Shown here: piece by piece, positions 24,931-64,000 of the stretch
How the letters are laid out: each line of letters starts with the position of its first letter
Position numbering within the stretch: position 1 is the first letter of the stretch
Source: Phallusia mammillata
Lineage: Eukaryota
Length of the DNA stretch: 64,000 nucleotides
Direction: 5' to 3'
Assembly: GCA_965637545.1 (NCBI GenBank)
Contig: OZ281500.1
Location: 12,400,001-12,464,000, forward strand
Program-made: the position numbers and the translations under genes
The notes under the pieces: model-generated
The model's input: the letters and a program-made list of their open reading frames with translations, nothing else
What the model was told of the DNA's origin: nothing
Database searches by the model: none

Positions 24931-24963
24931 GGGTTCGAATCCCACTGCAGACTAGAATTTTTT
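24931..24963 (+). repeat. Relic of the tRNA-like family seen at 63468 (B-box, 3' acceptor strand and T-run only)
   Basis: GGGTTCGAATCCCACTGCAGACTAGAATTTTT vs GGGTTCGAATCCCACCGCAGGCTAGA-TTTTT at 63519-63549; upstream sequence is unrelated. Confidence 0.6.
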
Positions 24964-26310
24964 ACAATAATGTATGCCTTGTGCTAAACTGAAAATGATG
25001 CTGCAAAAAGAAATATTCATGGGTGGTTTGAAACCAGTACATCACTCCTATTAGACCTCTCTATGATTGAACACATATTTGGGACTGGGCCAATCCGACG
25101 AAAATTTTAAACACATATGGTTGCTTTTTTATCTTTAGGGCTTGTATAACGTTTGATCCAACTAAAAATTACAAATACTGTTTTGGGGTGATGCAAACAC
25201 GTGGAAACCCGCATTAGACAAAAATTACAAATAAACAGTATGCGAACAGATAAGGGACCACTCATTTCAGCGATCCCCCAACGGAATTTGGTACTTGGGC
25301 TGTTTTAGCCTAAAGTTAAACAAAAACTCTCCACTAATATTGCAAAATGAACCTGTCGGCAGTTCAAATAAATCCGGTGCAAACCCAAGATTAAAATGGA
25401 TATATGCACATAACTTCTTGTAAAATTATTTTAAATACACTGCATTTTTAGAAAATAAAGATCACAACATACAAGTCAATAGAGTTTCTTTTAGGGTTTG
25501 GAAGTTACAAAAGTGCAACCATGCTCATTCGGAATCGTACAAAGGCAATATAAAAGTAAATGTATGTGGAAGGATGCACAACTTTACAACACTAACACTT
25601 GACTCAAACTAGTACGTCAATGCCACAGTTTGTGGAACATAAAATAAGCTGCACAACTGGTGGACGTAAAAGCACCATTAGCAATACATAACAGCGCAAC
25701 GTTGATCCTGACAATTAAGTGTAATCGTATAGCACTGATAAAAAATACAGACACAATGTGTTTTAGGTTGAAAGCGTTTTCCATACTAAGAAAGGGGGAA
25801 AATAGTAGGGCAAATATCTGGTTGCACGGTTCTGTTGTAAAGGATACCACGCCAATTTGGTCTGAACTTGGCTAATTGTCACACAAACAATAGAATCTCA
25901 AATGTAACAACTTTGCCCTGGGGTACAATGTTGTCTAACGCACTTGGCCGGACGCTCGGAAACGTTAACGAGCTGTACAAGCAAGTTGATGCAACAAGGC
26001 ACATGCTTGTTTCTGATCGAAGAGATTAAATCTACTTACAGCGGTGAGCCTACAATTACATGAGGATTAAAACTAAGGTCGAAAGCACTAAAAACAGGCT
26101 GCTATGACGTAAATTAACACAGCGGATTGGCACAAACGGGAGTTCAACAAAATACTGTTCGACTGCACATAGCCAAAGCAGCAGCACAATACATGAGCAT
26201 ATAAATGTCACGGTTTAAATCACGACGTACGTTGTGTACTGTTGGAATGATTTTTACATGTAAAGGGTATCGGATTGCAAAAATAAACAAACACAGCGTC
26301 GATAACGGTT

Positions 26311-62100: not shown

Positions 62101-63350
62101 TTATCAGTACATAGTTATAGAGATTGAAAATCACCGAAGAAACACCATAGTGATAACATAAGTCTGCGGTCAGCCAACATTGACACCCAACCACAGTTTT
62201 TCAATTCTAACGCATCGAGGCGATGAATGACGTAACAAAACCTTTGTCTCTTGTTCCAGGATCAACTGTAATAGCGTTAACTGCACCAAAGCATACAAGA
62301 CATTTCGATGTGCTGTTCTTAAACATGAGGATTTTAGCTGGTGGAGTATATTTGCTGGTTTCACACTTGGTTTTGTGTGAAGTGATTTCTTACGCGCTGA
62401 CAGCAGCAAACGGGAAGGAATCGTTAAAAATAAAGAAGAAACACAACTATGATCATAATTCTTCGGGATTAATGTGTGAGTTTATCTCAGTTGAAAGAGG
62501 CTGTGGGCGGTTAAGGAACAGGTAAAATGATTTGTAGCAAACTGTACTTAGCGATTTTGTCTAAGCAACATTGACCTTTTGTATTGGCTTTTTTGAATTA
62601 TTGCAATTGACATTTGATCAAAACTTAGTTGACGGAAAAACTTATTCACAAGAAAATGTTAAAAGTGTGTTTTTCAGCAAAAAAATGATTATTTTGAATG
62701 TTGTACAGATTGTTGACGACAAGTACAGGAAAAAAGTTTTGTGCGCGATATCGGAATAACCAAGATTTATTACGAGGCGAATACCTTTCATATTTGACGT
62801 CGGTGTTGCTAGAAATGCACAATGTTCCGACTATTATTCCAGTTCAGGTATCTGGCTGTTATGTGATTGTCAAACAAAACCAAACCACACCTGCAAAATT
62901 TCCACGAAAATGTTTTTCGTAGGTCACCATAAACTCAATCATGTGGTCAACCATCTGGTTTGAATTGAAAAGCGCTGGATGGGAAGCAAACGCCATCGTG
63001 ACGTTAACGGCATGGATGAATGATTTACGACCGGTGGTAGCGCCAAAGTGCATCCAGCTTCTGATTCCTTGTGACTTTGGACGTCAAAGCAACACAAAGG
63101 TCTAAAAACTTTCAATACAAATCTTTGCAAACATATAGTTTTTTAAATTGTGTCAATTTGTTTCCTCTGGATTTCTCTAAAAAATAATCGCAATTAAACT
63201 AAATAATCGAGGAAGTAGCTGCATATAGTTAATTGGATAATGTTGGTCTAAATAAAAACTGTTGGTCTAAAAAACAAATTGAAATTGAAACTCTTGAAAA
63301 AATGTTTATCGTAACGTATCTAAATTAAAAAAAAACATTTTATGCAACGT

Positions 63351-63710
63351 CACAGTACGCCAGGGCCATTGAAGGCGCTATACCGAATCAGCCGGTCACC
63401 TGACATGTGCAGCATACGAGGCAGGCAACGGTGCTTGTGATTCGACTTTCGGCGGATTCTCCACTGAGCCTGTGTAGCTCAGTTGGTAGAGCGCGAGTCC
63501 CGGAAAGACTCCTGTCGTGGGTTCGAATCCCACCGCAGGCTAGATTTTTCTAGCCTACGCCTTGCCATATGGTGGTGAATGCTTGGTGACCGGCTGATTC
63601 GGTATAGCGCCTTCAATGGCCCTGGCGTACTGTGATTTAATGAGTGTGCCGTGATCGCTGGTCTGCATAGACGCTTCAGGGCTGATCCCAGTTATGAATT
63701 TATGTTCTTC
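63351..63710. mobile_element. 360-bp composite insertion: inverted repeat - tRNA-like core - inverted repeat - 75-bp tail
   Basis: Perfect 51-bp inverted repeats at 63350-63400 and 63585-63635; exact 13-bp direct repeat TTTTATGCAACGT at 63338-63350 and 63711-63723. Confidence 0.75.
63468..63541 (+). ncRNA. tRNA-like Pol III unit (Lys-like scaffold, GGA in the anticodon position); more likely SINE-type or pseudo-tRNA than a canonical tRNA
   Basis: Acceptor stem GCCTGTG/CGCAGGC, D stem GCTC/GAGC, anticodon stem GAGTC/GACTC with loop CCGGAAA, T stem GTGGG/CCCAC with loop TTCGAAT. A-box TAGCTCAGTTGG, B-box GGTTCGAATCC and a downstream TTTTT terminator are present. Position 33 is C, there is one extra nucleotide after the D arm, and the variable loop is short. 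Confidence 0.8.
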
Positions 63711-64000
63711 TTTTATGCAACGTTTATGAGAATTTTGTTCTCAGTATCAGTAAACACTCTTTAAACAATTTCAAACTTGCATTTTATATTTTTTTGGATT
63801 GTTAGTAAATACAGCAAATTTTACATATAATTTATCAGTGATCGTCGACAAAAAAGATGCCTACCACTTGCGGGATAGATCCTGTACCAAACACTAAATG
63901 TCTATTTAATCGGTAGTTTTATAATACGAAATGTGTACTTCCGCGTGGCGTATCAGTAAACAAAATGGACACAAAATAAAAAAAAATACAATAAAAAATA

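What the first reader, a model, noticed from the sequence alone, without database searches (positions are those of the whole stretch)
63338..63723. Intact tRNA-like cloverleaf enclosed by perfect 51-bp inverted repeats in a TSD-flanked cassette
Seen: a 74-nt cloverleaf with all four stems paired, intact A/B boxes and a Pol III T-run that sits in its own hairpin (GGCTAGA-TTTT-TCTAGCC). It lies between perfect 51-bp inverted repeats beginning CACAGTAC, followed by a 75-bp tail, and the 360 bp is bracketed by an exact 13-bp direct repeat. Established: ordinary tRNA-derived SINEs start at the tRNA head and have no enclosing inverted repeats; eukaryotic Ser tRNAs have a long variable arm, U33 and normally no GGA anticodon. 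Inference: a Pol III transcript would start at 63468 and stop near 63548, excluding both repeats, so the cassette cannot be copied from its own Pol III RNA. It may be a MITE carrying a tRNA-like passenger, or a fold-back product retrotransposed from a read-through transcript, where the repeats would form a 51-bp dsRNA stem. Full pairing with an unusual sequence suggests a young or structurally constrained RNA family.
Basis: partly seen in the sequence, partly recalled or inferred. Interest (0 to 1): 0.78.

Follow-up and report, generated by a model that had tools for sequence, protein, structure and literature searches.

The report
Penelope-style retroposon copy with tRNA-like gene
The "inverted-repeat cassette" is one young copy of an abundant non-coding jumping element that carries a tRNA-like gene; its inverted arm is an insertion scar of the kind left by Penelope-like retrotransposons, not the working end of a DNA transposon.

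Summary

The inverted repeat is not a family feature. The family is a 355-bp unit: about 840 tRNA-like modules and about 1,900 body ends in the assembly. It inserts as 5'-truncated or multimeric head-to-tail copies with a 3' end at unit positions 320-337 and 9-17 bp duplications. Many insertions carry an inverted 5' arm. Arm length varies, but its outer end is fixed (17 of 19) at the body/tail boundary.

The window's left arm is such a scar. Both arms share a private variant, so they were copied from one template.

Truncation, partial tandems, head-to-head inversion and a tail on one side only match published Penelope-like element (PLE) insertions. I found the same anatomy in a coding PLE of this genome, which holds many intact PLE ORFs.

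No hammerhead ribozyme was found, so it is not a retrozyme in the strict sense. The partner PLE, any RNA and the role of the tRNA-like part remain unshown. The scan has reported this family on other DNA of this genome with the same reading.

The parts
63338..63350 (.). left copy of the 13-bp target-site duplication TTTTATGCAACGT (the last T could equally belong to the arm)
   Evidence: D5, 100%; other insertions of the family have their own 9-17 bp duplications
63351..63400 (-). inverted 5' arm: reverse complement of unit positions u247 to u197; outer end at the body/tail boundary; an insertion scar
   Evidence: outer end at u244-254 in 17 of 19 arms; shares the private variant of the right arm
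63400..63467 (+). start of the direct, 5'-truncated copy (u12-u79), upstream of the tRNA-like gene
   Evidence: window/L001: u12-u327, 97.8% to a reference unit
63468..63541 (+). tRNA-like cloverleaf (u80-u153) with A box TAGCTCAGTTGG and B box GGTTCGAATCC; C33, nominal anticodon GGA, short variable loop
   Evidence: 842 copies of its anticodon-arm 27-mer in the assembly, control 0
63534..63559 (+). hairpin whose loop holds the T5 run (63545-63549); its 5' arm overlaps the 3' strand of the acceptor stem
   Evidence: I7; in the MFE fold of the unit RNA this hairpin forms and the acceptor-stem pairing does not
63585..63635 (+). end of the element body (u197-u247); acts as the 'right arm' only because the left arm copies it
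   Evidence: body-end 16-mer found 1,908 times, 46% of them not followed by the tail
63636..63710 (+). one-sided 3' tail (u248-u327), ending ...ATGTTCTTC; present only at this end of the insertion
   Evidence: tail 26-mer found 1,127 times; parallel 88-nt one-sided tail in a coding PLE
63711..63723 (.). right copy of the 13-bp target-site duplication

Best explanation
Window 63351-63710 is one insertion of a non-coding, non-autonomous retroelement family built on a 355-bp unit. The unit runs: about 79 nt, then a 74-nt tRNA-like gene, a T5 hairpin, about 85 nt of body ending ...GTACTGTGA, an 81-nt tail ending ...TTCATCTTAA, and a 26-nt spacer seen only between tandem units.

Shown: an RNA-type, 3'-anchored copying process. 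The 3' end is fixed, 5' truncation is variable, head-to-tail multimers occur, and target-site duplications are 9-17 bp.

Inferred: integration is by target-primed reverse transcription carried out by a Penelope-like element (PLE) RT/GIY-YIG enzyme supplied in trans. One DNA synthesis starts at the end of the tail. A second, on the other target strand, starts at the body/tail boundary and yields the inverted, tail-less arm. The two products are joined at a variable inner junction.

In this copy the arm is 50-51 nt (u247 to u197), the direct part is u12-u327, and the duplication is 13 bp. The 51-bp inverted repeat is therefore a by-product of integration, not a transposase site.

The tRNA-like part is not a working tRNA. 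Its most likely role is a captured Pol III promoter or RNA-handling module. That role is inferred, and the 5'-end data do not support it as the start site of the copied RNA.
For: Family anatomy:
- The common piece is query 50-360, not IR-tRNA-IR, and it occurs in tandem with a 355-bp period.
- 23 insertions were dissected. 3' ends lie at u320-337. 5' starts are scattered but enriched at u343-u20. Multimers reach 2.9 units. Target-site duplications are seen in 13 or more, most often 13 bp.
- The inverted arm's outer end lies at u244-254 in 17 of 19 (0 of 20,000 simulations reach this).

Genome-wide counts:
- tail 1,127 > tRNA-like 842 > spacer 326, a gradient expected for 5' truncation.
- 1,908 body ends against 1,021 followed by the tail.
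- On contig C1, 16 head-to-head pairs and 0 tail-to-tail pairs among the 100 listed sites.

The window copy:
- Both arms carry the same minority variant (consensus G at u232 in 94% of depth), so they came from one template.

Link to PLEs:
- Published PLE insertions show 5' truncation, partial tandems, an inverted 5'-truncated copy at the 5' end and a tail at one end only (PMC8557442; PMC3846280).
- A 678-aa RT+GIY-YIG ORF in this genome sits in a head-to-head pair with an 88-nt tail at one end only.
- A genome search with that PLE protein gave 68 matches, most without internal stops, from 917 first-look candidates.
Against: - No sequence similarity between the unit (or its tail) and the one PLE family whose ends I could read (p = 0.37), so no partner is identified.
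- No hammerhead or other known ribozyme was found in the unit.
- No run on record as RNA holds it, and only contigs were available, so transcription, RNA ends and RNA topology are untested.
- The tail is 81 nt against the published 30-40 nt.
- Two insertions (L004, L015) end at u107 and u164 instead of the tail end.
- The enzyme assignment rests on insertion anatomy, which a LINE enzyme with site-specific second priming could in principle mimic.
Confidence: 0.7

Rival explanations
1. A SINE-like element mobilised by a LINE (non-LTR) enzyme. The inverted arm would come from ordinary twin priming, and the multimers from template jumping.
For: Variable target-site duplications of 9-17 bp, a fixed 3' end and 5' truncation are also LINE/TPRT hallmarks. 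5' inversions are known from L1 twin priming (established knowledge).
Against: Twin priming starts at scattered internal sites, whereas here 17 of 19 arms start within 11 nt of one position. [quoted passage not shown] The same anatomy occurs in a coding PLE of this genome. There is no poly(A) or simple-repeat end.
Confidence: 0.15
2. A retrozyme-like element whose template is a 355-nt circular RNA copied by rolling-circle reverse transcription. The tRNA-like part would replace the hammerhead as the processing signal.
For: Constant 355-bp head-to-tail units and 326 unit junctions. Two runs assemble the unit as a 385-letter contig, which equals 355 + 30, a closed cycle. Animal retrozymes are thought to be PLE passengers (bioRxiv 10.64898/2026.07.22.740005).
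Against: A closed cycle in a de Bruijn assembly arises from tandem DNA just as well. No ribozyme was found. Unit ends (u329/330, u247/248) do not coincide with the RNase P/Z sites of the tRNA-like part (u79/80, u153/154). 5' ends are clustered, not uniform. The unit RNA is not unusually structured (z = -1.5).
Confidence: 0.1
3. A MITE or foldback DNA transposon with 51-bp terminal inverted repeats carrying a tRNA-like passenger.
For: A perfect 51-nt inverted repeat starting CACAGTAC, and a flanking direct repeat.
Against: The left arm is unique to this copy. 8 of 22 dissected insertions have no arm, and the others have arms of different length. The duplication lies outside the 75-bp tail, not next to the right arm. 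Duplication length varies from 9 to 17 bp. 5' truncation and the copy-number gradient point to RNA copying.
Confidence: 0.02

Closest known systems
Penelope-like elements (EN+ PLEs) and their non-autonomous derivatives (e.g. non-autonomous Chlamys/MRC1; trans-mobilised pLTR cassettes in Adineta vaga)
   Same: 5' truncation, partial or multicopy head-to-tail insertion, an inverted 5'-truncated copy at the 5' end, an extension ('tail') at one end only, and variable short target-site duplications (PMC8557442, PMC3846280). Here.
   Different: No coding capacity. No detectable similarity to the one local PLE family examined. An 81-nt rather than a 30-40-nt tail. An internal tRNA-like gene with a Pol III-type A box, B box and T5 terminator, which I did not find described for PLE passengers in the held library.
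Animal (non-LTR) retrozymes
   Same: Short (170-400 bp) non-coding units in tandem, dispersed, thought to depend on PLEs.
   Different: The defining type I hammerhead ribozyme is absent. Circular RNA is not shown.
tRNA-derived SINEs
   Same: A tRNA-related module with A and B boxes, non-coding, hundreds of dispersed copies with target-site duplications.
   Different: The tRNA-like part is internal (about 80-105 nt from the preferred 5' ends) and is followed at once by a terminator. There is no LINE-type or A-rich tail. Insertions are multimeric and part-inverted.
TRIMp3 elements (Cassandra, Helenus, Ajax): non-autonomous LTR retrotransposons with 5S or tRNA-like sequences in their repeats (PMC10886601)
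   Same: A small-RNA-gene-derived, Pol III-type module captured inside the repeated part of a non-autonomous retroelement that is not LINE-dependent. The cloverleaf is not a working tRNA.
   Different: Those have true LTRs, PBS/PPT and fixed 4-5 bp duplications. This one has none of these and shows PLE-type scars.

Membership tests
PLE-type insertion (non-autonomous passenger of Penelope-like elements) | frequent 5' truncation from a fixed 3' end | tested here: met
   count gradient tail 1,127 > tRNA-like 842 > spacer 326
PLE-type insertion (non-autonomous passenger of Penelope-like elements) | partial tandems or head-to-tail multimers (pseudo-LTR arrangement) | tested here: met
   family. The window copy itself is 0.9 unit and has none.
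PLE-type insertion (non-autonomous passenger of Penelope-like elements) | inverted 5'-truncated copy adjoining the 5' end (head-to-head only) | tested here: met
   window arm 63351-63400; 16 head-to-head against 0 tail-to-tail pairs on C1
PLE-type insertion (non-autonomous passenger of Penelope-like elements) | [quoted passage not shown] | tested here: met
   arm outer end at u244-254 in 17 of 19; 46% of body ends lack the tail; same in the local coding PLE. Length is 81 nt against the published 30-40.
PLE-type insertion (non-autonomous passenger of Penelope-like elements) | sequence shared with an autonomous PLE (3' end or pLTR) | tested here: inconclusive
PLE-type insertion (non-autonomous passenger of Penelope-like elements) | potentially active RT+GIY-YIG PLEs in the same genome | tested here: met
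Animal non-LTR retrozyme | type I hammerhead ribozyme in each unit | tested here: not met
   Rfam at E<=1 (window) and E<=10 (full tandem units) finds only tRNA
Animal non-LTR retrozyme | unit-length circular RNA | not testable with these tools
   only contigs were available, and no run is on record as RNA
tRNA-derived SINE | tRNA-related Pol III head at the element's 5' end, with the transcript equal to the element | tested here: not met
   tRNA-like at u80-153, T5 at u157-161; 5' ends cluster at u343-u20
tRNA-derived SINE | LINE-derived or A-rich / simple-repeat 3' tail | tested here: inconclusive
   the end is ...TTCATCTTAA with no A-run; LINE tails were not compared
MITE / foldback DNA transposon | terminal inverted repeats shared by the family, directly flanked by a fixed-length duplication | tested here: not met
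Functional tRNA gene | canonical cloverleaf with U33 and, for Ser, a long variable arm | tested here: not met
   cloverleaf scores 55.3 bits, but has C33 and a short variable loop; the rule itself is established knowledge

The most novel reading that the evidence does not exclude
A distinct class of short retroposon: a 'SINE' that depends on Penelope-like elements rather than LINEs. In it, a captured tRNA-like Pol III module has taken the place that the hammerhead ribozyme holds in retrozymes, for example by driving or marking the template RNA in tandem masters. Its fixed body/tail boundary would mark where the PLE enzyme starts its second DNA strand, which would make the poorly understood PLE integration cycle readable from hundreds of young scars.
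Probability: 0.35. Interest if true: 0.65.

Novelty: new variant of a known kind. Interest (0 to 1): 0.5.

Why it matters
How PLEs integrate is still poorly understood. The tandem/inverted structures and the one-sided tail are described in the literature but not explained. A young family of roughly 1,000-2,000 pieces and only 355 bp gives many clean insertion scars. These include a sharply fixed start point for the inverted arm and a preferred 5' end, and integration models can be fitted to them.

The family would also widen the idea of a SINE: a tRNA-like, Pol III-type module riding on a non-LINE retrotransposition machine. The known parallel is the TRIMp3 group among LTR elements.

For genome annotation, such copies mimic MITEs, palindromes and tRNA genes, and should be masked as one family.

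Tried and rejected
1. MITE/foldback reading: rejected. The arms are copy-specific, and the duplication lies outside the tail.
2. Known ribozymes: none in the unit, and none in the local PLE pair.
3. Eyeballed motif resemblance between the PLE tail and the unit tail (GTGATCG ... GATCC ... ATGT(T)C): not better than shuffles, local score 18 against a mean of 16.9, p = 0.37. Dropped.
4. BLAST of the unit against the PLE/GIY-YIG loci L031-L041: only T-arm matches to genuine tRNA-Leu genes next to the PLE.
5. Unit RNA fold: no rod-like or unusually stable structure on the + strand (z = -1.5). The - strand gives z = -3.3, but I could attach no meaning to it.
6. Conservation of the tRNA-like part among 62 aligned pieces: low mismatch (0.40%), but the other parts are also at 0.2-1.5% once private variants of my reference unit are set aside. 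The copies are too young to show constraint.
7. RNA evidence: the runs are labelled 'RNA?' only by guess and are kept as contigs. They show the unit without the window's flanks, which low-coverage DNA would also give. No conclusion.
8. Empty site: not found. The one informative DNA run has the filled site. Organism B's run holds the unit but not the flanks.
Checking listed tail hits on C1-C2 against PLE ORF coordinates gave no adjacency.
10. Literature: no paper in the held library describes a tRNA-like-bearing PLE passenger. Repbase and Dfam could not be queried.

Full report
**Observation**

The region reads as described.
- A perfect 51-nt inverted repeat, 63350-63400 against 63585-63635.
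- A 74-nt cloverleaf at 63468-63541. ARAGORN calls it tRNA-Ser(GGA). Rfam's tRNA model scores it 55.3 bits against a gathering score of 29.
- A T5 run at 63545-63549 in the loop of a hairpin.
- A 75-bp stretch, 63636-63710.
- An exact 13-bp direct repeat, TTTTATGCAACGT, at 63338-63350 and 63711-63723.

The anticodon loop is CCGGAAA, so C rather than U stands at position 33, and the variable loop is short. By established tRNA rules this is not a working serine tRNA. No ORF of note overlaps it. It is the only ARAGORN tRNA call in the window.

**What the family looks like**

A search of the window's own 240-Mb assembly with 63351-63710 changed the picture. The recurrent piece is not IR-tRNA-IR. 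It is query 50-360 alone, often in head-to-tail arrays with a 355-bp period. Only the window copy has this left arm.

A tandem array (L016) gave a reference unit. I number the unit u1-u355; window position = u + 63388.
- u1-79: pre-tRNA part.
- u80-153: tRNA-like gene.
- u157-161: T5 run.
- u197-247: end of the body (...GTACTGTGA).
- u248-329: tail (...TTCATCTTAA).
- u330-355: spacer found only between tandem units.

The window copy lacks u330-355 and u1-11.

**Dissection of 23 insertions**

- 3' ends lie at u320-337.
- 5' starts of the direct part are scattered. Ten of 28 fall between u343 and u20 (scan-statistic p about 0.009).
- Multimers reach 2.9 units.
- Thirteen or more insertions have clear target-site duplications of 9-17 bp, most often 13.
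- About two thirds carry an inverted partial copy at the 5' side. Its inner end varies. Its outer end lies at u244-254 in 17 of 19 cases, and none of 20,000 random simulations reaches that.
- Arrays that seemed to end at u248-250 are the same structure seen from the other strand. There are two exceptions, L004 (end at u107) and L015 (end at u164).

The window copy is thus: duplication, arm (u247 to u197, inverted), direct part u12-u327 including the tail, duplication.

Both arms carry the same minority base, where the family consensus is G at u232 (94% of depth in a DNA run). They were therefore copied from one template. None of the other dissected insertions shares the u197/u12 junction, so the arm arose with this insertion.

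**Genome-wide counts**

These are pattern searches; reversed controls gave 0-1 hits.

| Piece | Mismatches allowed | Count |
|---|---|---|
| tRNA-like anticodon-arm 27-mer | <=2 | 842 |
| Tail 26-mer | <=2 | 1,127 |
| Inter-unit spacer 28-mer | <=2 | 326 |
| Body-end 16-mer | <=1 | 1,908 |
| Body end followed by tail start | <=1 | 1,021 |

- The decline tail > tRNA-like > spacer is what 5' truncation from a fixed 3' end predicts.
- Nearly half of the body ends are tail-less, which is the expected mark of inverted arms.
- Among the 100 listed sites on contig C1 there are 16 minus-then-plus pairs 54-570 bp apart, and no plus-then-minus pair. The inversion is therefore strictly head-to-head.
- About 11 of those 16 pairs carry the tail start on one side only.

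**What it resembles**

Craig et al. 2021 (PMC8557442) and Arkhipova et al. 2013 (PMC3846280) describe Penelope-like element (PLE) insertions as follows:
- highly 5'-truncated;
- arranged in partial tandems;
- often with an inverted 5'-truncated copy at the 5' end that creates flanking inverted repeats;
- with a 30-40-bp 'tail' at one end only;
- with short target-site duplications.

They also describe non-autonomous passengers that insert head-to-tail in many copies. The first paper states that these features are not seen in LINE integration.

I then looked for PLEs in this genome.
- GIY-YIG hits led to a 678-aa ORF with RT and C-terminal GIY-YIG domains (L039:4853-6889, minus strand).
- A genome search with that protein gave 68 matches at 41-100% identity from 917 first-look candidates. 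Most have no internal stop, and some lie in 3.3-kb tandems.
- That PLE sits as a head-to-head pair. One copy ends with an extra 88 nt that the inverted copy lacks. This is the same one-sided tail anatomy as in the short element.
- An isolated copy of that 88-nt PLE tail lies in the window itself at 63821-63902.

**What is not shown**

- The unit has no hammerhead or other Rfam ribozyme. Neither has the local PLE pair.
- The unit shares no significant sequence with that PLE. The other PLE families could not be fetched.
- The unit RNA is not unusually structured.
- No listed run is on record as RNA, and all are kept as contigs. Two runs assemble the unit as a 385-letter contig, 355 + 30, which is the signature of a cycle. 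Tandem DNA gives the same signature as a circle would.
- One DNA run has the same filled site, and no empty site was seen.

**Mechanism**

Shown: 3'-anchored copying with truncation, multimers, variable duplications, and a head-to-head arm with a fixed start.

Inferred:
- Target-primed reverse transcription by a PLE enzyme acting in trans.
- One synthesis starts at the tail end and a second, on the other strand, at the body/tail boundary. One possible reason is that the tail is the part of the RNA held by the enzyme.
- The two products are joined at a variable point.

The tRNA-like gene has consensus A and B boxes and a terminator, so it probably makes a short Pol III RNA. Preferred 5' ends lie 60-95 nt upstream of it. 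Element ends do not match RNase P/Z sites. Its role in transposition (promoter in tandem masters, RNA stability, or a relic) is therefore open.

**Comparison and novelty**

- It works like a PLE passenger.
- It fails the defining test for a retrozyme: no hammerhead.
- It fails the test for a SINE: the tRNA-like part is not the head, and there is no LINE-type tail.
- It fails the test for a MITE.
- The nearest conceptual parallel for the captured Pol III module is the TRIMp3 group of LTR elements (PMC10886601).
- I found no paper describing a tRNA-like-bearing PLE passenger. Repbase and Dfam were not available.

The scan's own earlier notes on other DNA of this genome describe the same family with the same reading. 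They call the organism a sea squirt, which I did not test. I reached the PLE reading before seeing them and tested its main points independently.

**Verdict**

- Observation: confirmed.
- First reading: partly supported.
- Novelty: a new variant of a known kind.
- Interest: moderate.

Noticed in passing
window 63821-63902: An isolated ~82-bp copy (89% identity, 8-nt deletion) of exactly the 88-nt one-sided 'tail' of a coding Penelope-like element (L039), starting at that element's body/tail boundary. It lies 110 bp downstream of the finding.
   Followed up: partly
window 24931-24964: A 34-bp fragment 88% like the unit's T-arm, acceptor 3' strand and T-run trailer (u131-164), ending at a T6 run. 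Possibly a relic of an older relative of the family.
   Followed up: no
L039 1-4316 and 9385-10000 (G000:C4:7513000-7522999): A tandem array of genuine tRNA-Leu (AAG/TAG alternating) and tRNA-Met(CAT) genes with a 486-bp period, interrupted by a head-to-head Penelope-like element pair with an intact 678-aa RT+GIY-YIG ORF.
   Followed up: partly
G000:C8:5582776-5602118 and other places listed: Many divergent Penelope-like families (41-100% identity to the query ORF), most without internal stops. One is in a 3.3-kb-period tandem of at least four copies.
   Followed up: no
G000:C3 3.88-5.07 Mb (L023-L027 and further rows): The same two-unit insertion, including a 90%-identical variant unit, recurs at about ten places with identical structure. 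This points to a large segmental or macro-tandem duplication that carried the element along.
   Followed up: no
run X20 (organism B), laid on L001:1000-2600: A run labelled as a different organism holds the 355-bp unit almost letter for letter (385-letter contig, depth 42), and also the neighbouring PLE-tail repeat, but not the unique flanks. This could be trace DNA of the window's species, a very close relative, or transfer; it was not resolved.
   Followed up: no
G000:C2:1719885/1720227, 1726227/1726569, 1872358/1872700, 28134258/28134606; C3:4108447/4108804: Some arrays of the family have periods of 342, 348 or 357 bp instead of 355, so there are length variants of the unit.
   Followed up: no
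L020 705-1416: The direct part of one insertion seems split by about 455 bp of foreign DNA, with unit positions u280-287 present on both sides. This is probably a secondary insertion with an 8-bp duplication. It was read from BLAST coordinates only.
   Followed up: no
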